From Octopus sinensis (taxonomy: Eukaryota), in NCBI RefSeq assembly GCF_006345805.1, contig NC_043012.1:1798001-1862000 (forward strand): 64,000 bases of DNA, read 5' to 3'. The position numbers and the translations under genes were made by a program. The notes beneath the pieces are model-generated. The model was not told the origin of the DNA and did no database searches. It saw only the letters and a list, made by a program, of their open reading frames with translations. Every line of letters begins with the position of its first letter. Within the stretch, counting starts at the first letter, position 1. Shown here piece by piece: positions 739 to 56,597 of the stretch.

Positions 739-777
<39 letters not shown>

Positions 778-834
778 TATATATATATATGATATATATA
801 TATATATATATAGATATATATGTATATATATATG

Positions 835-894
<60 letters not shown>

Positions 895-899
895 TATAA

Positions 900-944
<45 letters not shown>

Positions 945-958
945 TATATATTATATAT

Positions 959-1008
<50 letters not shown>

Positions 1009-1021
1009 ATGTATACATATG

Positions 1022-1110
<89 letters not shown>

Positions 1111-1127
1111 TATATATATATATTATG

Positions 1128-1196
<69 letters not shown>

Positions 1197-1448
1197 CATA
1201 TCTATGTGTGTGTATATATGTATGCATATCTATGTGTATATATATATATATATAATATATATATATACATACATATGTATACATATATATATATATACAT
1301 ACATATGTATACATATATATATATATACATACATATGTATACATACATATATATATGTATATATGCATACATACATATATATATACATATATACATATAT
1401 ATATATATGTGTGTGTGTGTGTATGTATATATATATGTATGTATATAT
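735..1448. repeat. (TA)n-rich compound microsatellite
   Basis: Direct reading of the sequence. Confidence 0.95.
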
Positions 1449-1850
1449 GAAAATTTTTGTAATGAGATAAAAAACCAAGGCTGTATAGATATTAGAGCAT
1501 TTATAGATAGAAGGTCTTACAGATGTTTCTAGAATATTAATTAATAATATCCCTTCATCAGAGTCGGTGTGAGAGGAAAAGTCATAGTTAGTTTCGATGT
1601 GATACAAATAGAGAGTGAGGTGGAGAAAATAAAATAGATGTAAGATATGTATGGGTATTGAGTTCATAAATCCGTTTTATAGGCATAATGGTATATATGT
1701 GTAATATTCCAATATCCTTTGAGTAAAATCCAAAAGTCCAACAGAGTTTAATATGAGTCCATCCAAATGTAAAGTTTATAAGCAATGTAAGATTCTCTTA
1801 AAGTTGGTCATTCCAGTAGGGAATATATATAGAATGTAGCAGATTCAAGG
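1449..1850 (-). mobile_element. Probable Penelope-like element 3' end / pLTR remnant with a hammerhead motif
   Basis: The minus strand at 1513-1565 has CUGAUGA, an 8-bp stem II, GAAAC and GUA. 1459-1490 recurs in the palindrome at 12161-12262. Confidence 0.55.
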
Positions 1851-10989: not shown

Positions 10990-11570
<581 letters not shown>

Positions 11571-28879: not shown

Positions 28880-29270
28880 TACTGAATTTGATACAGATAA
28901 GAGTTCACCAAGGCTTGATCCTCAACCCCTTCCTATTCATTATCATCTTCAAAACCATAACAGAGCGCAACAATATGCTGATGATCTTGCCCTGATGATA
29001 GCAGACTCTGTAACAGAATTAGGAAAGAAATTCCAGGTATGGAAACAAAACCTGGAATTAAAGAGTCTTAAAGTTAACTTGACAAAGACTAAGATCCTAT
29101 TAAGCAAGAAATCAGACAGGATCCTTTACCCTTCAGGTGAATGGTCCTACTAAATATGTAGGAAGGTCTAGGTAGAAATTCTGCTTAGTGTACCCAGTGC
29201 AAGCAATGGACACACAAGAGGTGTAGTGGAATAGAAGGAAGGTTAACAGAGGAAGTAGTGTTTGTATGTG
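28880..29270 (+). mobile_element. RTE-type RT fragment
   Basis: YADDLALMIADSVTELGKKFQVWKQNLELKSLKVNLTKTKIL. Confidence 0.85.
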
Positions 29271-29434
29271 ATAGGTGTATGTATATATGTGTATATATAT
29301 ATATGTGTGGTGTGTGTGTATACTGTAAATTTAGGGTGAATACTTGATAAGTGTAAGCACCTGTATACGCCAGCTAGTGGCAGATGTGAGAGGGTATATA
29401 TATATATATATATACTGTATATACATATATATAT

Positions 29435-29476
<42 letters not shown>

Positions 29477-29479
29477 TAT

Positions 29480-29526
<47 letters not shown>

Positions 29527-29538
29527 CATATATACTGA

Positions 29539-29592
<54 letters not shown>

Positions 29593-29650
29593 CTGTATAT
29601 ACATATATATATATATACTGTATATACATATATATATATATATATATGTA
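29270..29650. repeat. (TA)n compound microsatellite
   Basis: Direct reading of the sequence. Confidence 0.95.
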
Positions 29651-29812
29651 ACAGATTTCTTACAGTTTCCATCAACCAAATCCACTCACAAGTCTTTGGT
29701 TGGCTCAAGGCTATAGTAGAAGACACTTGCACAAAGTGCCATGCAGTGGGACTGAACCTGTAACCATGTGGTTGGGAAGCAAACCTCTTACAACACAGCC
29801 ATGCCCACACCT
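29648..29812 (-). mobile_element. Family A SINE head
   Basis: Reverse complement of the family A head. Confidence 0.8.
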
Positions 29813-37170: not shown

Positions 37171-37515
37171 AGCGAGGTGTAAGTGTTATAGCATAGTAAG
37201 GTGTAAGTGTTATAGCATAGTGAGGTGTGTTATAGCATAGCAACGTGTGTTATAGCATAGCAACGTGTAAGTGTTATAGCATAGTGAGGTGTAAGTGTTA
37301 TAACATAGTGAGGTGTAAGTGTTATAGCATAGCGAGGTGTAAGTGATATAGCATAGCGAGGTGTAAGTGTTATAGCATAGCAACATGTGTTATAGAACAG
37401 TGAGTTGTAAGTGTTATAGCATAGCAAGGTGTAAGTGTTATAGCATAGTGAGGTGTAAGTGTTATAGCATAGCGAGGTGTAAGTGTTATAACATAGTGAT
37501 GTGTAAGTGTTATAG
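37171..37515. repeat. 24-bp minisatellite (gtgttatagcatagtgaggtgtaa), ~14 copies
   Basis: Direct reading; includes some shorter deletion units. Confidence 0.9.
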
Positions 37516-37624: not shown

Positions 37625-37643
37625 AAATTTTTTTTTTTTTCAG
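37625..37643 (+). promoter_or_regulatory. Probable 3' splice acceptor (poly-T then CAG) ahead of the coding exon
   Basis: aaattttttttttttttcag ends 160 bp before the ATG. Confidence 0.5.
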
Positions 37644-37802
37644 AATGGAATTAATTTAAAGAAAGGAATAAAATAAAACAACACTGAAATTAGCTAAATC
37701 AACAACAACAAAAAGAAGAAGCAAAAAAGCAAAGCAAATCGAAAAATCAGGATTTTTTTTTTTCTCATAATCTCAAATCCATTTGATATTTTGTATGAAA
37801 GA

Positions 37803-38879
37803 ATGATGGTAGCCACACCAATAACAGAGCAACTCTCCGCAAAGTGTTCCAAACATCATATTGATGTCACCTCTGATGTTGATGATAGTCTGAATGTGTT
37901 CGCAAATGGTGACAGTGAGATTTCACTGATTCAGAAAGCTAAGATTAAGAAAACTGAAGAGAAAAACGATGTCAGTGAGAAACTGGAAGAAAGCAGTCAA
38001 AGCGATTCTATGTTAACTGATGATGGTGACACAGAAACCAGTAGCATCGGGTCAAACAAAGGGTCGACTGGATTGACCCCAGATGAAATTAAAGTTGATG
38101 AACAAGTGATTGAAAAGAAAGTTAAAAAAAAATATTATTGGTATGGCAACCATAAACTAGTGAAACCCATCAAAGACATCCCACCACGATTCCAACAGAT
38201 GCTGGCAGAAACTAATGCTGAAAAAATACGATGTGAAGGACGACCTATCATTCTACAACAGCAGGTTGAACAGAACCGAAATGACGCAAACATTACGTCA
38301 ACGTCTTTCAACCCAGATGCACAGTGTTTTATTCCGAATCAAATATTTGACAAGATGGATGCTAACGTTAAGGACATGCCATTGTCCGTGACAAATGGAG
38401 TAAGCAACAGTAGCAGCAGTGATAGTAGCAGCAGTTGCAGTAGTAATAGTAGTAATACCAGTAACAGTATGATGTGTAGCAGATCTGGATGTGGTAATGC
38501 AGTGAGTGGTACTCATTCTGAAATGCTGTCACCTGCCAATGGAGCACACGTGCCCTTCACAGCGAATCCTATATACACAATACACATTTACAGCTCAGCG
38601 AACACTCCGATGACAAATGCAAGCATTTCTTCATCTGCTAACCCTTGCTGCATGCATGCCACTAATTCATGTACTAACATGTACCCTTCAGCAAACAACC
38701 AGCAACCATTACAAGCACCGGTGTATTATACCTCGCAGCCGTTTTCACAACCAACCTATGCAACAGCTGAATATCAACCATTCAGACATTCCGTAAATCA
38801 TGCCCAGTCGGTCCAGTATGCTCCCTGTATTACTTATACTCAAAATCACCAATACCCGTTAGCTGCAATGCCTCATTAA
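37803..38879 (+). CDS. Uncharacterised 358-aa, probably largely disordered protein with a PAM2-like motif; putative post-transcriptional regulator
   Basis: The only long non-repetitive ORF, with natural composition. It has an acidic/Ser N-terminal part, a KKKYYWYGNHKLVKPIKDIPPRFQQML block, SFNPDAQCFIP (PAM2-like) and a Ser/Pro/Tyr/Gln-rich C-terminus. The track ORF starts at TTG 37791; the first ATG is at 37803. Confidence 0.85.
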   Translation: MMVATPITEQLSAKCSKHHIDVTSDVDDSLNVFANGDSEISLIQKAKIKKTEEKNDVSEKLEESSQSDSMLTDDGDTETSSIGSNKGSTGLTPDEIKVDEQVIEKKVKKKYYWYGNHKLVKPIKDIPPRFQQMLAETNAEKIRCEGRPIILQQQVEQNRNDANITSTSFNPDAQCFIPNQIFDKMDANVKDMPLSVTNGVSNSSSSDSSSSCSSNSSNTSNSMMCSRSGCGNAVSGTHSEMLSPANGAHVPFTANPIYTIHIYSSANTPMTNASISSSANPCCMHATNSCTNMYPSANNQQPLQAPVYYTSQPFSQPTYATAEYQPFRHSVNHAQSVQYAPCITYTQNHQYPLAAMPH

Positions 38880-42391: not shown

Positions 42392-42743
42392 CTATCACCA
42401 ACATTACCATTGAGATACCATTCACACACAAAAAAAAACACATCACCATATCACCCTCCCCGTTATCATCATCATCATCATCATTGCCATCATCATCTTT
42501 GTTGTCAACAACATCACCATCATCTTCATTAATAGAAGGTTGCAAATATTAATCAGCTGAAGTTTATATTGTTTCCCATCAACACAAGTCTATCTGGAAT
42601 ACAGGTAGTTGTAAAAAGTGTTTAGTTATGACTTGTATCATACACAAACACAGCAACCATATTATCAAACATCAAACCCACCGTATCATCAAACACCACA
42701 CCAACTATGATCAAACACCACACTGATTACATCATCATACACT

Positions 42744-45700
42744 ACACCAGCAACATTATCAAACATCACACAGCAACATTATCAAACATCACACCAGCAA
42801 CATTATCAAACACCACACCAGCAACATTATCAAACATCACACCAGCAACATTATCAAACATCACACCAGCAACATTATCAAACATCACACCAGCAACATT
42901 ATCAAACATCACACCAGCAACATTATCAAATACCACACCAGCAACATTATCAAACATCACACCAGCAACATTATCAAACATCACACCAGCAACATTATCA
43001 AACAGCACATCAGCAACATTATCAAACATCACACCAGCAACATTATCAAACATCACACCAGCAACATTATCAAATATCACACCAGCAACATTATCAAACA
43101 TCACACCAGCAACATTATCAAATACCACACCAGCAACATTATCAAATACCACACCAGCAACATTATCAAACATCACACCAGCAACATTATCAAACATCAC
43201 ACCAGCAACATTATCAAACACCACACCAGCAACATTATCAAATACCACACCAGCAACATTATCAAACATCACACCAGCAACATTATCAAACATCACACCA
43301 GCAACATTATCAAACACCACACCAGCAACATTATCAAACATCACACCAGCAACATTATCAAACATCACACCAGCAACATTATCAAACATCACACCAGCAA
43401 CATTATCAAACATCACACCAGCAACATTATCAAACATCACACCAGCAACATTATCAAATATCACACCAGCAACATTATCAAACAGCACACCAGCAACATT
43501 ATCAAACATCACACCAGCAACATTATCAAACATCACACCAGCAACATTATCAAATACCACACCAGCAACATTATCAAACATCACACCAGCAACATTATCA
43601 AACATCACACCAGCAACATTATCAAATACCACACCAGCAACATTATCAAACATCACACCAGCAACATTATCAAACACCACACCAGCAACATTATCAAACA
43701 TCACACCAGCAACATTATCAAACATCACACCAGCAACATTATCAAACATCACACCAGCAACATTATCAAACATCACACCAGCAACATTATCAAACATCAC
43801 ACAGCAACATTATCAAATATCACACCAGCAACATTATCAAACACCACACCAGCAACATTATCAAACATCACACCAGCAACATTATCAAACACCACACCAG
43901 CAACAATATCAAACACCACACCAGCAACATTATCAAACATCACACCAGCAACATTATCAAACATCACACCAGCAACATTATCAAATATCACACCAGCAAC
44001 ATTATCAAACACCACACCAGCAACATTATCAAATACCACACCAGCAACATTATCAAACATCACACCAGCAACATTATCAAACACCACACCAGCAACATTA
44101 TCAAACATCACACCAGCAACATTATCAAACATCACACCAGCAACATTATCAAACATCACACCAGCAACATTATCAAACATCACACCAGCAACATTATCAA
44201 ACATCACACCAGCAACATTATCAAACAGCACACCAGCAACATTATCAAACATCACACCAGCAACATTATCAAATACCACACCAGCAACATTATCAAACAT
44301 CACACCAGCAACATTATCAAACATCACACCAGCAACATTATCAAACATCACACCAGCAACATTATCAAACATCACACCAGCAACATTATCAAACAGCACA
44401 CCAGCAACATTATCAAACATCACACCAGCAACATTATCAAACATCACACCAGCAACATTATCATCAACACCACCAGCAACATTATCAAATACCACACCAG
44501 CAACATTATCAAACATCACACCAGCAACATTATCAAATACCACACCAGCAACATTATCAAACATCACACCAGCAACATTATCAAATACCACACCAGCAAC
44601 ATTATCAAACATCACACCAGCAACATTATCAAACATCACACCAGCAACATTATCAAACATCACACCAGCAACATTATCAAACATCACACCAGCAACATTA
44701 TCAAACATCACACAGCAACATTATCAAATATCACACCAGCAACATTATCAAACACCACACCAGCAACATTATCAAACATCACACCAGCAACATTATCAAA
44801 CACCACACCAGCAACAATATCAAACACCACACCAGCAACATTATCAAACATCACACCAGCAACATTATCAAACATCACACCAGCAACATTATCAAACATC
44901 ACACCAGCAACATTATCAAACATCACACCAGCAACATTATCAAACACCACACCAGCAACATTATCAAAACCACACCAGCAACATTATCAAACATCACACC
45001 AGCAACATTATCAAACATCACACCAGCAACATTATCAAATACCACAGCAGCAACATTATCAAACATCACACCAGCAACATTATCAAACACAATACCACAC
45101 CAGCAACATTATCAAACATCACACCAGCAACATTATCAAACATCACACCAGCAACATTATCAAATACCACACCAGCAACATTATCAAACATCACACCAGC
45201 AACATTATCAAATACCACACCAGCAACATTATCAAATACCACACCAGCAACATTATCAAACAGCACACCAGCAACATTATCAAACATCACACCAGCAACA
45301 TTATCAAATACCACACCAGCAACATTATCAAATACCACACCAGCAACATTATCAAATACCACACCAGCAACATTATCAAACATCACACCAGCAACATTAT
45401 CAAATACCACACCAGCAACATTATCAAATACCACACCAGCAACATTATCAAACATCACACCAGCAACATTATCAAATACCACACCAGCAACATTATCAAA
45501 TACCACACCAGCAACATTATCAAATACCACACCAGCAACATTATCAAACATCACACCAGCAACATTATCAAATACCACACCAGCAACATTATCAAATACC
45601 ACACCAGCAACATTATCAAACATCACACCAGCAACATTATCAAATACCACACCAGCAACATTATCAAATACCACACCAGCAACATTATCAAACAGCACAC

Positions 45701-47135
45701 CAGCAACATTATCAAACATCACACCAGCAACATTATCAAATACCACACCAGCAACATTATCAAATACCACACCAGCAACATTATCAAACATCACACCAGC
45801 AACATTATCAAACATCACACCAGCAACATTATCAAACATCACACCAGCAACATTATCAAACATCACACCAGCAACATTATCAAACATCACACACCAGCAA
45901 CATTATCAAACATCACACCAGCAACATTATCAAACATCACACCAGCAACATTATCAAACATCACACCAGCAACATTATCAAACATCACACCAGCAACATT
46001 ATCAACAGCACACCAGCAACATTATCAAATCACACACCAGCAACATTATCAAACATCACACCAGCAACATTATCAAATACCACACCAGCAACATTATCAA
46101 ACATCACACCAGCAACATTATCAAACATCACACCAGCAACATTATCAAACAGCACACCAGCAACATTATCAAACATCACACCAGCAACATTATCAAATAC
46201 CACACCAGCAACATTATCAAACATCACACCAGCACATTATCAAACATCACACCAGCAACATTATCAAACATCACACCAGCAACATTATCAAACATCACAC
46301 AGCAACATTATCAAATATCACACCAGCAACATTATCAAACACCACACCAGCAACATTATCAAACATCACACCAGCAACATTATCAAATACCACACCAGCA
46401 ACATTATCAAACACACACCAGCAACATTATCAAATACCACACCAGCAACATTATCAAACATCACACCAGCAACATTATCAAATACCACACCAGCAACATT
46501 ATCAACACCACACCAGCAACATTATCAAATACCACACCAGCAACATTATCAAACATCACACCAGCAACATTATCAACATCACACCAGCAACATTATCAAA
46601 TACCACACCAGCAACATTATCAAACATCACACCAGCAACATTATCAAACATCACACACCACAACATTATCAAACATCACACCAGCAACATTATCAAAATC
46701 ACCAACACCAGCAACATTATCAAACATCACACCAGCAACATTATCAAACATCACACCAGCAACATTATCAAACATCACACCAGCAACATTATCAAATACC
46801 ACACCAGCAACATTATCAAATACCACACCAGCAACATTATCAAACATCACACCAGCAACATTATCAAATACCACACCAGCAACATTATCAAACATCACAC
46901 CAGCAACATTATCAAATACCACACCAGCAACATTATCAAACATCACACCAGCAACATTATCAAACATCACACCAGCAACATTATCAAATACCACACCAGC
47001 AACATTATCAAACATCACACCAGCAACATTATCAAACATCACACCAGCAACATTATCAAACATCACACCAGCAACATTATCAAACATCACACCAGCAACA
47101 TTATCAAACATCACACAGCAACATTATCAAACACC
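42744..47135. repeat. 24-bp minisatellite (acaccagcaacattatcaaacatc), ~183 copies, 4.4 kb
   Basis: Direct reading; variation is concentrated at aa(c/t)a(t/c/g)c, with scattered 1-bp indels. Confidence 0.97.
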
Positions 47136-47410
47136 AATAACAATATCAAGCAATGTATTAAGCTCATCAGAAACCACACCAACAACATTGTTAAACACTA
47201 TACAAACAACATTATCAAACAACACATGAAGCACATTGACAAAAGCTACAACAACAACATTATCTAATGCTACACTGACAACATTATCACGCCAGAATTA
47301 TCAAACACCACACTATGTTGTCAAATGATACAGCAGCCATATTATGAGACACTACACCAACAGCATTATCAAACAATATACTAGCAATATTATCAAACAC
47401 CACAAAGCAA

Positions 47411-48830: not shown

Positions 48831-49499
48831 GCTACTGCTGCTGCTGATGATGATGATGATGATGATTATGATGATGATGATGATGATGATTGCACCGACA
48901 GTATCGAACACCTCACTAACTATGTCATACAATGCTCCAACCACATCAACTGCATTATAAAACATCACACCAACAGTATTATCAAACAATATATCGACCT
49001 TATTATCAAATGACTTTGTCAAGCACCGACCAATCACATTATCAAACAAAATATCAATCAGAGTATGGAACAACATACACTGACTATATTATCAAGCAGG
49101 TTTCTTTCCTCAATTTCTACAGTTTTGAGTTGGTTGGATAATAGTCATAGTAGCAGATGGCCATGCTTGAGAATCCAGAGAATAGGACCATATGAAGAAG
49201 GTGCTTGAAATAGTGAACAGCAAAAATGTGTGGATGGACATTATCAAACATACAACAATATAAAAGTACAAAACTGGATTTTAAAACTGTTTTCTCTTTT
49301 ATATTGCTTTATTTTTTTTTTTGCTGCATTGCTAAGAAATTTTCTGCCAAAAGAAAATTTTAAAATTGAAGAGTTATTATTGCAGAAGGATTGTACAAAT
49401 TTGCACAAGCTGTTTAAAAATACTAGGTTAAGGAAAAAGTTTGTGTGCTATGTTAAAATAATGATTTTTTCATGCAAGAATTTATTCAAAAACAACAAC

Positions 49500-49900
49500 A
49501 ACTACCCTTCAAAATAAAGACCACCATTTTCCCACCAAAGTACCAATCTTTCAGCTTTGAATCAAAAAATTCTTGACGGGCTTCTTCAACTTCATCGAAT
49601 GATTCAAATCGGTGACCTTTCATAAAGAGCTGCATTGACTGGAAGAGACTGTAGTCAGATGGAGCAACATCTGGACTACAGGTTGGGTGTGGCAGAACTT
49701 CCACGCTGACCATTTCTTCAGTCTTGTTACTGGTCTTTCTGGTGGTATGTGACTGGCTTTGCATTGTCTTATTGAAACAAAGCGTGTTTTCAATGAACAA
49801 GTCTTGGGAACTTTTCAACCAGTGCATCACAGACTCGATCAAGTTGCTCGCAGTAAAGTTCAGCATTGATGGTGCAACCATTCAGCACAAGTTTGGCACA
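49500..49900 (-). mobile_element. Mos1-like mariner transposase C-terminal remnant
   Basis: VEVLPHPTCSPDVAPSDYSLFQSMQLFMKGHRFESFDEVEEARQEFFDSKLKDWY. Confidence 0.9.
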
Positions 49901-53139: not shown

Positions 53140-53187
53140 ATACAGTATATATTATATATATATATATTTATATATATATATATATAT

Positions 53188-53256
<69 letters not shown>

Positions 53257-53501
53257 ATGTGTGTGTGTATATATGTGTATTATATATGTATATATTTATA
53301 TATATGTATATGTATGTGTAAGTGTATATATATGTGTGTGTGTATATGTATATATGTGTATATATATGAGTGTACGCGAGTATGTCGATGTATATGTAGG
53401 TATGTAGAGTTATGTGTATGTGCAGGTATGTGAGTGTAGATACAAATTGTAGATGTGTATATATATGTATGTGTATATATACATGTATATAGGTATATGT
53501 A

Positions 53502-53546
<45 letters not shown>

Positions 53547-53633
53547 GCGAGTATGTAGAGATATAAGTATGTGCATGTGTATATATATGTGTGTATATAT
53601 ATGTATGGGTATGTGTATGTGTATGTATGTATG

Positions 53634-53666
<33 letters not shown>

Positions 53667-54703
53667 ATGTATGCATATACGTATGTATGTATGTATGTAT
53701 ATGTGTATGTATATATGTGTGTAAGTGTGTGTATATATGTAAATGTAAGTGTGTGTGCTTGTATGAGAATGTATGTATGTTTGCACACATGTATATATGT
53801 GTGTGTATGTGTATATGTATATATATATGTATATATATATGTATATATATATATATATATGTATATATATGTGTATGTATATATATGTGTATATGTGTGT
53901 ATGTGTATGTATGTATGTATATATATGCGTGTGTATGTGTATGTATGTGTATATGTGTGTGTGTGTATACATGTGTGTATGTGTATGTATGTATATATAT
54001 GCGTGTGTATGTGTATGTGTATATGTACATATACGCGTACGCTCGTGTGTTTATGTATATGTAGGTACGTAGAGTTATCTATGTGTGTATTTATATGTAC
54101 ATGTGTGTAAGTATGTATATATATATATATATATATATGTGTATGTGTGTGTGTGTATATATATATGTATGTATATATGTATGTGTATATATATGTGTAT
54201 ATATGTATATGTGTATGTATATATGTGTGTAAGTGTGTGTATATATATGTAAATGTAAGTGTGTGTGCTTGTATGAGAATGTATGTATGTTTGCACACAT
54301 GTATATATGTGTGTGTATGTGTATATGTATATATATATATGTATATATATGTGTATGTATATATATGTGTATATGTGTGTGTGTGTATACATGTGTGTAT
54401 GTGTATGTATGTATGTATATATATGCGTGTGTATGTGTATGTATGTGTATATGTGTGTGTGTGTATACATGTGTGTATGTGTATGTATGTATATATATGC
54501 GTGTGTATGTGTATGTGTATATGTACATATACGCGTACGCTCGTGTGTTTATGTATATGTAGGTATGTAGAGTTATCTATGTGTGTATTTATATGTACAT
54601 GTGTGTAAGTATGTATATATATATATATATATGTGTATGTGTGTGTATATATGTATGTATGTATATATGTATGTGTATATATGTGTATATATGTATGTAT
54701 ATA

Positions 54704-54760
<57 letters not shown>

Positions 54761-55137
54761 TGTGTGTGTGTAAGTTTATATGTATGTATCCGTCTATATA
54801 ATAGGTAACTGCACGTACATATACTTAATATTTATTTTTTGAGTATGCATGTATGAATAACTGCGCGTATATATATTTTACTATTTACTTATTTTTTGAG
54901 TATGCATGTAAGTATGAATATAAGGAGGCGCGTGTGTGTGTGTGTATGTGTAAGCATAGATATATGTATACTTTTACGCATGTGTGTACTTATGTGTATA
55001 TATGGATGCGCGCGTGTGTGTGTGTGTGTATGGGTACGCATGTACATGTGTATGTGCGGTATGAGTATATGAGTATGTATGTATGTGTATGTGTGTGTGT
55101 ATATATGTATATGTATGTGTGTATATGTATGTATGTG

Positions 55138-55191
<54 letters not shown>

Positions 55192-55388
55192 TATATATGT
55201 ATGTATGTGGGTGTGTGTATGTGTATAAATGTATGTATGTATGGATGTATGGATGTATGTATGTATGTATACGTATGTATGTGTATGTGTGTATATGTAT
55301 GTATGTGTATGTGTGTATATATATGTATATGTGTGTGTATGCGTATGTGTGTGTATATATATATATAATATATATGTGTATATATATG

Positions 55389-55431
<43 letters not shown>

Positions 55432-56230
55432 ATTTGTATGTAGGTGTATATGTATGTGTGTGTATTTATATTTATTGGTGTATATATATAGACTAGCCTT
55501 CTAAGAGTGTAGACATGAATCTGTAGGTACGCGTACGTATGTGTATATACGTGAATGTATGTAGATGTATGTATGTATGAATATAACGCGTGCGTGCGTG
55601 TATGTGTATGAGTGTACGAATGAGTGAGTGTACGTGCTAAAGAGTGTGCGTGAGTGAATGAGTGCTTGTTTTCCAGTAGACAGATAAATGGACTGGCTGT
55701 CATAGCCAAGATGTTTGTGACCAAACGGCCAAAGATAACAAAAGTAATAAACGAAGATAATAAAATTAAAATTAGGGAATGGGTCTGTATTTGTATGTGT
55801 ATATATATGTGTGTATGTGTAGGTATGCATAGGTACACATATGTATATATATATATATATACATGTATGTATGTGTATGTATGTGTGTGTATATGAGTGT
55901 GTATGTGTATATATGTGTATATAGGGACTAGTGTGCTGTGTGTGCATGTGTGTGTGTGGATATGTGTGTGTATGCGTGTATGTGAGTATGTGTGTGTATG
56001 TGTATATATATTTTTCTGTGCGTATATGTATGTGTGGTCGTGTGTGTATATATACATGTGTGTATACGTGTATGCATGTGAGTGTGTGTATGTATACATA
56101 TATGTGTATGTGTAGATATGTATATGTATGTGTAAGTGTATATATATGTATATATATGTGTGTGTATGTATGTGTGTATGTATATGTATATATGTTTGTA
56201 TGTGTGTGTATGTATGTATACATGTGTGCA
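53140..56230. repeat. 3.1-kb mosaic (TA/TG/TATG)n microsatellite field
   Basis: Direct reading; contains a ~500-bp internal tandem duplication. Confidence 0.95.
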
Positions 56231-56597
56231 TAGGTATAAGTGAGAATCTCCTTATTTACCTAAAACTCTATTCCCCTTTTTTTATATATAGATTTTTTTA
56301 TTTTTTTATTTTTTTATTTATTCTTCTATCTAATTTAACACTGACTCCTTGACCACTCCCCCAAGTATGATATTTTGCACTATGCCTACCCCCAAAAAGT
56401 CCCCCACCAACACCCCTTTAAACCTGCCTAAATGTATAAATGCCAATACAATTCTTGTTAACTAGCTTCCTGAAGATTTCTCTTGAATGAAACAGTTCTA
56501 GTCCTGTAGAAGCTCCTTCTATATAATAAATTAATTTTACTCTGCTATGTATTGAGTACCTTATTTACTGTGGTTAACCCCGAATCAACCCGGGACC

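What the first reader, a model, noticed from the sequence alone, without database searches (positions are those of the whole stretch)
37803..38879. Orphan protein combining a PAM2-like motif, an eIF4E-binding-like motif and a DIPPRF block
Seen: YGNHKLV (38142-38162) fits the canonical eIF4E-binding pattern YxxxxLphi, next to KPIKDIPPRFQQML. TSFNPDAQCFIP (38301-38336) resembles the PAM2 consensus (LNxxAxEFxP) that binds the PABP MLLE domain. The rest is low-complexity. Inference: a lineage-specific regulator contacting both cap and poly(A) machinery. Both motifs are short and can occur by chance.
Basis: partly seen in the sequence, partly recalled or inferred. Interest (0 to 1): 0.7.

Follow-up and report, generated by a model that had tools for sequence, protein, structure and literature searches.

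The report
Stand-alone octopus PAM2 adaptor protein
This octopus gene encodes a mostly disordered 358-residue protein that is not an orphan: it is a free-standing copy of the tail of mollusc and annelid Otu/OTUD4-like proteins, it carries a well-conserved docking motif for poly(A)-binding protein, and its proposed cap-binding-factor motif is not supported.

Summary
The protein is not an orphan. A profile of its core finds 54 representative relatives in molluscs and annelids. The long relatives are OTU-Tudor proteins (Otu/OTUD4/ALG13 kind) that carry the same module in their disordered tail. The octopus gene is a stand-alone copy without OTU or Tudor. It is under purifying selection (dN/dS 0.23 overall, 0.08 in the core), and its orthologue in another cephalopod is represented by a spliced transcript contig.

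The PAM2 reading is well supported. TSFNPDAQCFIP meets every defining PAM2 position, and N, A, F and P are unchanged in 50 of 57 relatives. The family motif profile finds only the PAIP2 PAM2 peptide as a significant match in the whole PDB. Pfam PAM2 is the only recurring family.

The eIF4E reading is weak. The Tyr is missing in the 13 annelid-type relatives, although the adjoining KLVKPIKDIPPRF block is kept. AlphaFold2 places YWY-GN-HKL in a beta-hairpin, not a helix. Comparison with 4E-BP1 gives no signal.

Best reading: a new PAM2-bearing, PABP-docking adaptor with a second conserved hairpin-helix element whose partner is unknown. Moderate interest.

The parts
37637..37643 (+). Predicted splice acceptor (TTTTCAG after a T-run) of a 5'UTR intron. 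The coding exon would start at 37644.
   Evidence: Read from the sequence and also present in Octopus contigs L001 and L002. It is inferred by analogy. In the orthologue P0004, transcript-like contig L008 is 100% identical to genomic L007 up to a ttttcag acceptor 66 nt before the ATG, then diverges.
37803..38879 (+). Complete coding sequence, 358 aa plus stop, in one exon.
   Evidence: ORF shown. There is an in-frame TAA 108 nt upstream, inside the same predicted exon. It is 99% identical to the O. vulgaris predicted protein P0001. dN/dS against another Octopus species is 0.23.
37803..38111 (+). Acidic Ser/Asp/Glu-rich N-terminal disordered region (residues 1-103, pI 4.3).
   Evidence: Composition. 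pLDDT is about 45-55. dN/dS is 0.45, the least constrained part.
38115..38132 (+). Basic cluster KKVKKK (residues 105-110).
   Evidence: A basic run (KRK, KRR or RRK) precedes the block in mollusc-type relatives.
38136..38162 (+). YWYGNHKLV (residues 112-120). It is predicted as a beta-hairpin with G115-N116 at the turn.
   Evidence: Core-only AlphaFold2 gives strands at 112-114 and 117-119, with pLDDT 87-91. The Tyr is kept in 45 of 58 relatives and absent in the 13 annelid-type ones.
38154..38192 (+). Block B, KLVKPIKDIPPRF (residues 118-130): the most conserved element of the family.
   Evidence: P122 and P127 are invariant. K118, L119, K124, I126, R129 and F130 are at least 90% conserved in 57 sequences.
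38184..38234 (+). Predicted alpha-helix PRFQQMLAETNAEKIRC (residues 128-144).
   Evidence: It is the only helix in the full-length model (pLDDT about 78) and appears again in the core-only model. L134 is nearly invariant.
38235..38249 (+). EGRPI (residues 145-149), a conserved [CF]-E-G-x-P-[ILV] element closing the module.
   Evidence: G146 is invariant. E145 and P148 are at least 90% conserved.
38301..38336 (+). PAM2 motif TSFNPDAQCFIP (residues 167-178): F3, P5, A7, F10, P12.
   Evidence: It fits the refined PAM2 definition. [LF]N[PA]xAxxFxP is kept in 50 of 57 relatives. The motif profile hits the PAIP2 PAM2 peptide 1JGN_B at E 0.004, the only significant hit in the PDB. Pfam PAM2 hits 18 of 57 members. 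hhalign against PAIP2 gives 80% probability.
38337..38876 (+). Ser/Asn/Thr/Pro/Gln/Tyr-rich disordered tail (residues 179-358). It holds small conserved aromatic motifs: PIYTIHIY (256-263), NPCCMH (280-285), VYYTSQ (307-312) and QYAPCITYTQN (338-348).
   Evidence: The motifs are conserved among cephalopods and partly beyond. pLDDT is about 40-53. dN/dS is 0.21.

Best explanation
The ORF is a real, expressed-type gene for an intrinsically disordered 358-aa adaptor protein. It is a stand-alone cephalopod copy of a module that, in other molluscs and in annelids, lies in the disordered C-terminal half of OTU-Tudor proteins of the Otu/OTUD4/ALG13 kind.

The module has two conserved elements joined by a linker of variable length:
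- A small hairpin-plus-helix element centred on KLVKPIKDIPPRF...EGxPI. Its partner is unknown.
- A canonical PAM2 motif.

Inferred mechanism: PAM2 docks on the MLLE domain of cytoplasmic poly(A)-binding protein and places the protein on polyadenylated mRNPs. The hairpin-helix element brings in or contacts a second factor. The Tyr/Gln/Pro/Ser-rich tail favours association with RNA granules, as described for the disordered regions of OTUD4.

Because it lacks the OTU and Tudor domains, it would act as a pure adaptor, or as a competitor for PABP, and not as a deubiquitinase.

Shown here: the gene, selection on it, family membership, motif identity and conservation, and predicted disorder. Inferred: MLLE binding, granule association and adaptor role.
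For: Gene reality:
- The ORF is intact and 99% identical to an O. vulgaris predicted protein.
- dN/dS is 0.23 overall and 0.08 in the core.
- Orthologue P0004 has a spliced transcript-type contig, and an in-frame stop lies between the splice acceptor and the ATG.

Family:
- The core profile finds 54 representatives.
- Named members include 'protein ovarian tumor locus-like' and 'deubiquitinase otu-like', and Capitella, Aplysia, Biomphalaria and Littorina proteins.
- The long member P0065 matches the OTUD5 OTU domain (E 1.8e-6) and the SPF30 Tudor domain (E 0.04).
- P0084, which carries the module, aligns with hemichordate 'ALG13-like' P0086 over OTU, linker and Tudor (E 2e-47) and over the LRFFFNLG motif (E 3e-11).

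Stand-alone status:
- tblastn finds no OTU or Tudor exons in the 64-kb window.
- None lie within 10 kb of the paralogue P0008 either.

PAM2:
- All defining positions are met.
- N, A, F and P are invariant in 50 of 57 relatives.
- The only significant PDB hit is the PAIP2 PAM2 peptide.
- Pfam PAM2 is the only recurring family, in 18 of 57 members, best E 1.2e-4.
- hhalign against PAIP2 gives 80% probability, E 1.4e-5.

Disorder and the hairpin-helix. OTUD4 as a disordered RNA-granule protein: PMC6602300.
Against: - No binding was tested or modelled; no multimer prediction was available.
- Position 9 of the motif is Cys, not the preferred Glu.
- The window protein itself falls below Pfam's PAM2 reporting threshold, and the best family member scores 19.5 bits against a cut-off of 20.
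- The octopus paralogue P0008 and the scallop long forms have a degenerate PAM2 or none, so PAM2 is dispensable in some lineages.
- The partner of block B is unknown.
- No transcript evidence was obtained for this octopus locus itself.
- OTU-Tudor exons further than 37.8 kb upstream cannot be excluded by search alone. The in-frame stops downstream of the predicted acceptor argue against this.
Confidence: 0.72

Rival explanations
1. One reading: one protein contacts both ends of the mRNA. It would bind eIF4E (or 4EHP) through YGNHKLV, or the extended YWYGNHKLV, and bind PABP through PAM2. It would act as a cap-to-tail bridge or a repressor.
For: - YxxxxL-phi is present and is invariant in the 45 mollusc-type relatives.
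- It extends to YxYxxxxL-phi, the pattern of the GIGYF 4EHP-binding motif (PMC5538437). That pattern appears in only 0.3% of shuffles.
- It is followed by a Pro-rich stretch and then hydrophobic residues F130, M133 and L134 10-14 residues on. This loosely resembles the elbow loop and non-canonical motif of 4E-BPs.
Against: - The Tyr is essential in 4E-binding motifs, yet it is absent in 13 of 58 relatives that keep block B and PAM2.
- AlphaFold2 puts Y112-Y114 and H117-L119 in a beta-hairpin with Gly-Asn at the turn, pLDDT 87-91, and not in a helix.
- Pro122 lies 8 residues after the Tyr, inside what would be the canonical helix.
- hhalign against 4E-BP1 gives 0.2% probability. Its only match (PIKDIPPR to PVTKTPPR) would put the Tyr four residues out of register.
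- The core profile finds no 4E-BP or eIF4G peptide in the PDB.
Confidence: 0.1
2. The PAM2 motif mainly docks on the MLLE domain of the HECT ubiquitin ligase UBR5/HYD, not on PABP. That would tie the module to ubiquitin signalling, in keeping with its origin in deubiquitinase-type proteins.
For: From established knowledge, not tested here: MLLE domains occur in PABPC and in UBR5, and PAM2 peptides can bind both. The module sits in OTU-domain proteins in most lineages.
Against: Nothing in the sequence distinguishes the two MLLE partners. The closest match to the motif is the PAIP2 peptide solved in complex with the PABP domain. The two partners are not mutually exclusive.
Confidence: 0.12
3. 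The [LF]NPxAxxFxP motif is conserved for a reason unrelated to MLLE domains, for example as part of an intramolecular fold with block B or as a site for another partner. Its likeness to PAM2 would then be convergent.
For: Position 9 is Cys in 35 of 50 members, not Glu. That Cys and Cys144 are invariant among close relatives. The motif always occurs together with block B.
Against: - The linker between block B and the motif varies from 32 to 73 residues and is predicted disordered, so a fixed fold is unlikely.
- Annelid-type members replace both cysteines.
- All five MLLE-contacting positions are kept.
Confidence: 0.06

Closest known systems
PAIP2 (PABP-interacting protein 2) and other PAM2 proteins (ataxin-2, eRF3, Tob, PAN3, LARP4)
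   Same: It carries a 12-residue PAM2 in a disordered region with all MLLE-contacting positions. The motif profile matches the PAIP2 PAM2 peptide. Like PAIP2, it is a small, largely disordered protein with an acidic N-terminal part and a second conserved element upstream of PAM2.
   Different: Outside PAM2 there is no detectable similarity to PAIP2; hhalign aligns the PAM2 only. No PAM1 was detected. Position 9 is Cys. The upstream element (KLVKPIKDIPPRF plus helix) matches nothing in Pfam or the PDB.
Otu / OTUD4 / ALG13 OTU-Tudor proteins
   Same: The module is homologous to the C-terminal disordered region of the mollusc and annelid members of this family. Both are long, disordered and aromatic-rich. 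OTUD4 is an RNA-granule protein (PMC6602300).
   Different: The octopus protein has no OTU domain, no Tudor domain and no LRFFFNLGVEYY motif. Conversely, the hemichordate ALG13-like relative lacks block B and PAM2. No paper held in the library links OTUD4 to a PAM2 of its own.
4E-BPs and GIGYF1/2 (eIF4E- and 4EHP-binding proteins)
   Same: It matches the patterns YxxxxL-phi and YxYxxxxL-phi, followed by a Pro-containing linker.
   Different: The Tyr is not conserved across the family. The predicted conformation is a beta-hairpin. There is no profile similarity to 4E-BP1.

Membership tests
PAM2-motif (MLLE-binding) proteins | A 12-residue motif xx-phi-x-(P/V)-x-A-x-x-F-x-P: hydrophobic residue at position 3, Ala at 7, Phe at 10, Pro at 12. 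| tested here: met
   T-S-F3-N-P5-D-A7-Q-C-F10-I-P12 at residues 167-178, checked against the definition in PMC2854688.
PAM2-motif (MLLE-binding) proteins | The motif is conserved in orthologues and relatives. | tested here: met
   [LF]N[PA]xAxxFxP is present in 50 of 57 relatives, with N4, A7, F10 and P12 unchanged.
PAM2-motif (MLLE-binding) proteins | Profile-level similarity to validated PAM2 peptides. | tested here: met
   The family motif profile against the whole PDB gives one significant hit, the PAIP2 PAM2 peptide 1JGN_B, at E 0.004. hhalign against PAIP2 gives 80% probability, E 1.4e-5. Pfam PF07145 hits 18 of 57 members, best E 1.2e-4, though all are near or below the 20-bit cut-off.
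PAM2-motif (MLLE-binding) proteins | The motif lies in an accessible disordered region. | tested here: met
   No regular secondary structure is predicted at residues 150-358, and pLDDT there is about 55-71.
PAM2-motif (MLLE-binding) proteins | Physical binding to a PABP or UBR5 MLLE domain that depends on Phe10. | not testable with these tools
   No complex prediction or experiment was available.
eIF4E-binding proteins (4E-BP type) | Canonical YxxxxL-phi motif present. | tested here: met
   Y114-GNHK-L119-V120. The same pattern arises in 9% of shuffles.
eIF4E-binding proteins (4E-BP type) | Motif residues, especially Tyr, are conserved wherever the surrounding block is conserved. | tested here: not met
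   The Tyr is present in 45 of 58 relatives. In the 13 annelid-type relatives it is replaced by N, P, G, R, M, T or S, although KLxKPIKDIPPRF is kept.
eIF4E-binding proteins (4E-BP type) | The motif can form the canonical alpha-helix. | tested here: inconclusive
   AlphaFold2 predicts a beta-hairpin with G115-N116 at the turn, at pLDDT 87-91. Pro122 lies at +8. A monomer prediction cannot exclude folding on binding.
eIF4E-binding proteins (4E-BP type) | Sequence or profile similarity to known 4E-binding regions. | tested here: not met
   hhalign against 4E-BP1 gives 0.2% probability. The core profile has no 4E-BP or eIF4G hit in the PDB.
eIF4E-binding proteins (4E-BP type) | Binding to the dorsal surface of eIF4E or 4EHP. 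| not testable with these tools
   No complex prediction or experiment was available.
Otu/OTUD4/ALG13 OTU-Tudor proteins | N-terminal OTU domain. | tested here: not met
   The ORF has no Pfam hit. tblastn with long members finds no OTU exon in the window.
Otu/OTUD4/ALG13 OTU-Tudor proteins | Tudor domain and the LRFFFNLGVEYY motif. | tested here: not met
   Both are absent from the ORF and from the window. They are present in long relatives.
Otu/OTUD4/ALG13 OTU-Tudor proteins | Homology to the C-terminal module of the mollusc and annelid members. | tested here: met
   Profile hits at E 1e-18 to 1e-31 to long members that carry OTU and/or Tudor regions.

The most novel reading that the evidence does not exclude
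In molluscs the hairpin region YxYGxxKL-phi, with the Pro-rich linker and helix after it, is a new kind of eIF4E- or 4EHP-binding region. The small protein would then tie a cap-binding factor to PABP through PAM2. It would be a one-polypeptide cap-to-tail clamp derived from a deubiquitinase tail, and cephalopods would have released it as a free regulator.
Probability: 0.08. Interest if true: 0.8.

Novelty: new member of a known kind. Interest (0 to 1): 0.4.

Why it matters
PAM2 motifs are how many translation and mRNA-decay regulators attach to poly(A)-binding protein. A previously undescribed PAM2 family in molluscs and annelids would link Otu/OTUD4-type proteins directly to poly(A) mRNPs in these animals. 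These proteins are known for germline and RNA-granule roles. The family also defines a second, very strongly conserved element (KLVKPIKDIPPRF...EGxPI) with no known partner. Cephalopods appear to express the module as a free protein without the enzyme part. That gives a simple system for asking what the tail of this family does by itself.

Tried and rejected
- **Pfam on the ORF and on 15 relatives:** no hits except sub-threshold PAM2 and, in one long member, weak OTU and Tudor.
- **Core profile against PDB sequences:** only a chance hit to a fluorescent protein, E 1.5.
- **Foldseek of the core model against the PDB:** no match.
- **hhalign against 4E-BP1:** no signal.
- **PAIP2 PAM1:** I recalled that PAIP2's 'CFQEMLEE' looks like 'RFQQMLAE'. 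hhalign against PAIP2 aligned the PAM2 only, so I dropped the idea.
[quoted passage not shown] Rejected.
- **Literature string search for IPPRF/DIPPRF:** the hits showed no connection to this motif.
- **Search for a cephalopod OTU-Tudor gene:** no cephalopod hit, but the word index limits sensitivity, so this is not evidence of absence.
- **Taxonomy of the annelid-type clade:** only Capitella is named; the others come from unnamed assemblies.
- **Pseudogene or retrocopy without function:** rejected on dN/dS and on the start codon being conserved across four cephalopod sequences.

Full report
**1. What is in the sequence**

ORF 37803-38879 (+) is open for 358 codons.
- YGNHKLV is residues 114-120 (38142-38162).
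- KPIKDIPPRFQQML follows immediately.
- TSFNPDAQCFIP is residues 167-178 (38301-38336).

The N-terminal third is acidic and Ser-rich (pI 4.3). The core is basic (pI 9.4). The C-terminal half is Ser/Asn/Thr/Pro/Gln-rich.

It is the only long ORF in the 64-kb window that is not a translated simple repeat. The window has octopus-like composition, with many microsatellites. The protein is 99% identical to an Octopus vulgaris 'hypothetical predicted protein'.

In 200,000 shuffles of the protein:

| Pattern | Share of shuffles |
|---|---|
| YxxxxL-phi | 9% |
| YxYxxxxL-phi | 0.3% |
| PAM2 pattern | 0.05% |

**2. It is a real gene and a complete one**

Against a contig from another Octopus species (83% nucleotide identity, colinear through both flanks), dN/dS is:
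- 0.23 over the whole ORF,
- 0.08 in residues 100-180,
- 0.45 in the N-terminal region,
- 0.21 in the tail.

Four cephalopod sequences start at the homologous Met.

For the orthologue P0004, a genomic-type contig (L007) and a second contig (L008) are 100% identical from 66 nt upstream of the ATG onwards. They diverge exactly at a ttttcag acceptor, so L008 is a spliced transcript with a 5'UTR intron. An in-frame TAA lies 12 nt before its ATG, inside the coding exon.

The window has the equivalent T-run plus CAG at 37637-37643 and an in-frame TAA 108 nt before the ATG. O. vulgaris has one 6 nt before. The coding sequence is therefore complete in one exon.

tblastn with long relatives finds no OTU or Tudor exons anywhere in the window. 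It finds none within 10 kb of the second octopus paralogue P0008, which has the same layout: an acceptor 21 nt upstream and a stop at -3.

**3. It is not an orphan**

A word-indexed search gave 11 homologues in cephalopods and the limpet Lottia.

Conservation is concentrated in KKKFYWYGNHKLVKPIKDIPPRFQLMLAETNAEKARCEGRPI and in FNPDAQCFIP. A few aromatic motifs in the tail are also conserved.

A profile of the core, searched against 1.84 billion representative proteins, found 54 proteins at E <= 0.001 and 38 at E <= 1e-10. Named members come from Littorina, Biomphalaria, Aplysia, Plakobranchus, Mizuhopecten ('protein ovarian tumor locus-like') and the annelid Capitella.

Long members carry additional regions upstream of the module:
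- an OTU domain, or its C-terminal end;
- a linker of the type PYRIAKALDPxxYRNxELD;
- a Tudor-like domain;
- a DLPxxDxNTLRFFFNLGVEYY motif.

Supporting results:
- Biomphalaria P0065 matches the OTUD5 OTU domain (E 1.8e-6) and the SPF30 Tudor domain (E 0.04) in the PDB.
- Further relatives are named 'deubiquitinase otu-like' (Argopecten) and 'ALG13-like' (the hemichordate Ptychodera and a scorpion).
- The module-bearing snail protein P0084 aligns with hemichordate P0086 over OTU, linker and Tudor (E 2e-47) and over LRFFFNLG (E 3e-11).
- P0086 has neither block B nor PAM2.

So the module is an addition to the disordered tail of Otu/OTUD4/ALG13-type proteins, seen so far in molluscs and annelids. 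Octopus has two stand-alone copies of the tail.

**4. The PAM2 motif**

The refined published definition is: a hydrophobic residue at position 3 (Leu, sometimes Phe or Pro), Pro or Val at 5, invariant Ala at 7, invariant Phe at 10 (the key determinant) and Pro at 12, with Glu preferred at 9 (PMC2854688).

The octopus motif is T1 S2 F3 N4 P5 D6 A7 Q8 C9 F10 I11 P12. Every defining position is met, and only the preferred Glu9 is missing.

Evidence across the family:
- [LF]N[PA]xAxxFxP occurs in 50 of 57 sequences, with N4, A7, F10 and P12 unchanged.
- It lies 32-73 residues after block B.
- A profile of 26 family motifs, searched against every PDB chain of 20 residues or more, gave one significant hit. 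That hit is the PAIP2 PAM2 peptide solved with the PABP C-terminal domain (1JGN_B, E 0.004).
- Pfam PAM2 is the only family that recurs among members: 18 of 57 at E <= 1, best 1.2e-4. All are close to or under the 20-bit cut-off, as expected for an 18-position model.
- hhalign of the core alignment against PAIP2 aligns the PAM2 at 80% probability, E 1.4e-5.

Binding itself remains an inference.

**5. The proposed eIF4E motif**

The pattern is there. In mollusc-type members it is invariant and extends to YxYxxxxL-phi, the pattern described for GIGYF binding to 4EHP (PMC5538437). Four results speak against a canonical 4E-binding helix:
- In the 13 annelid-type relatives the Tyr is replaced by N, P, G, R, M, T or S, while KLxKPIKDIPPRF, the helix, EGxP and PAM2 are all retained. 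The conserved unit is therefore block B, not the Tyr motif.
- AlphaFold2 on the core alignment places Y112-W-Y114 and H117-K-L119 in the two strands of a beta-hairpin with G115-N116 at the turn, followed by a helix at 128-144. This part has pLDDT 87-91. The full-length model shows the same helix and is otherwise disordered (mean pLDDT 52.7).
- hhalign against 4E-BP1 gives 0.2% probability. Its only match is PIKDIPPR to the elbow-loop PVTKTPPR, which would put the Tyr four residues out of register.
- The core profile finds no 4E-BP or eIF4G peptide in the PDB.

I rate the cap-binding reading at about 10%.

**6. Block B**

KLVKPIKDIPPRF...L...[CF]EGxP[ILV] is the most conserved part of the family. 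P122, P127 and G146 are invariant in 57 sequences. It has no match in Pfam, PDB sequences, PDB folds or the text of the held literature. Its partner is unknown.

Many PAM2 proteins pair the motif with a second PABP- or RNA-contacting element. This is from general knowledge and was not tested. A cooperative second contact is my best guess, and it is only a guess.

**7. Mechanism proposed**

The protein is a disordered adaptor that docks on the MLLE domain of PABP through PAM2. UBR5, the other MLLE protein, is a possible alternative partner. The hairpin-helix element engages a second factor. The aromatic-rich tail favours association with RNP granules, as reported for the disordered parts of OTUD4 (PMC6602300).

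Without OTU and Tudor, the octopus protein cannot be a deubiquitinase. It may act alone or compete with other PAM2 proteins.

The second octopus paralogue has a degenerate motif, FGPDTPCFLP, with Asn4 and Ala7 lost. Scallop long forms lack the motif entirely. PABP docking is therefore not universal in the family.

**8. Novelty**

In the held library, the only paper mentioning both OTUD4 and PAM2 does so once each, in an unrelated context. I found no description of this module.

It is a new member of a known kind: a PAM2-bearing protein family, with an unexplained companion element. Interest is moderate, 0.4. The PAM2 call was a good catch. The orphan label is wrong, and the dual cap/tail model is unsupported on the cap side.

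Noticed in passing
window 37171-37515: A 24-bp tandem array (about 15 copies, 83% matches) lies 290 bp upstream of the start codon. The same array is present in the contig from another Octopus species (L002), so it is a conserved feature of the upstream intron or promoter region.
   Followed up: partly
window 42660-47136: A 4.5-kb satellite with a 24/48-bp unit and about 187 copies. It has very strong GC and AT skew. It produces a spurious 1477-aa ORF and several antisense ORFs.
   Followed up: partly
window 49486-49881 (-): A fragment of a mariner/Mos1-type transposase C-terminus. It matches SETMAR and Mos1 transposase at E about 2e-12 in PDB sequences. Pfam reported nothing at E <= 0.01.
   Followed up: yes
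L004/L005 10001-11632 (octopus paralogue P0008): A second stand-alone, single-coding-exon paralogue of 543 aa. It keeps block B, but its PAM2 is degenerate (FGPDTPCFLP: Asn4 to Gly, Ala7 to Thr), so it has probably lost MLLE binding.
   Followed up: partly
P0035, P0038, P0039, P0085 (scallop long forms): These OTU-Tudor members keep block B and the helix, but my pattern searches found no PAM2. The two elements can therefore be lost independently.
   Followed up: no
P0065 residues 17-30 (Biomphalaria long form): In the alignment to OTUD5, the catalytic Cys position of the OTU domain is Ser. Argopecten P0085 has Cys-Cys there. Some members may be catalytically inactive.
   Followed up: no
window 37644-37661 versus L001: The O. 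vulgaris copy appears to lack about 18 bp (AATGGAATTAATTTAAAG) just after the predicted acceptor, judged by eye from the printed sequences. It has a TAA 6 nt before the ATG where the window has GAA. The proteins also differ at a few residues (99% identity). The window therefore comes from a very close relative or another haplotype.
   Followed up: no
window 740-1532, 11038-11448, 29243-29810, 53168-56231 and others: Many long (TA/CA/TG)n-type microsatellite tracts generate Tyr-Ile, Cys-Val and His-Thr repeat ORFs of 120-410 aa. None is a gene candidate.
   Followed up: no
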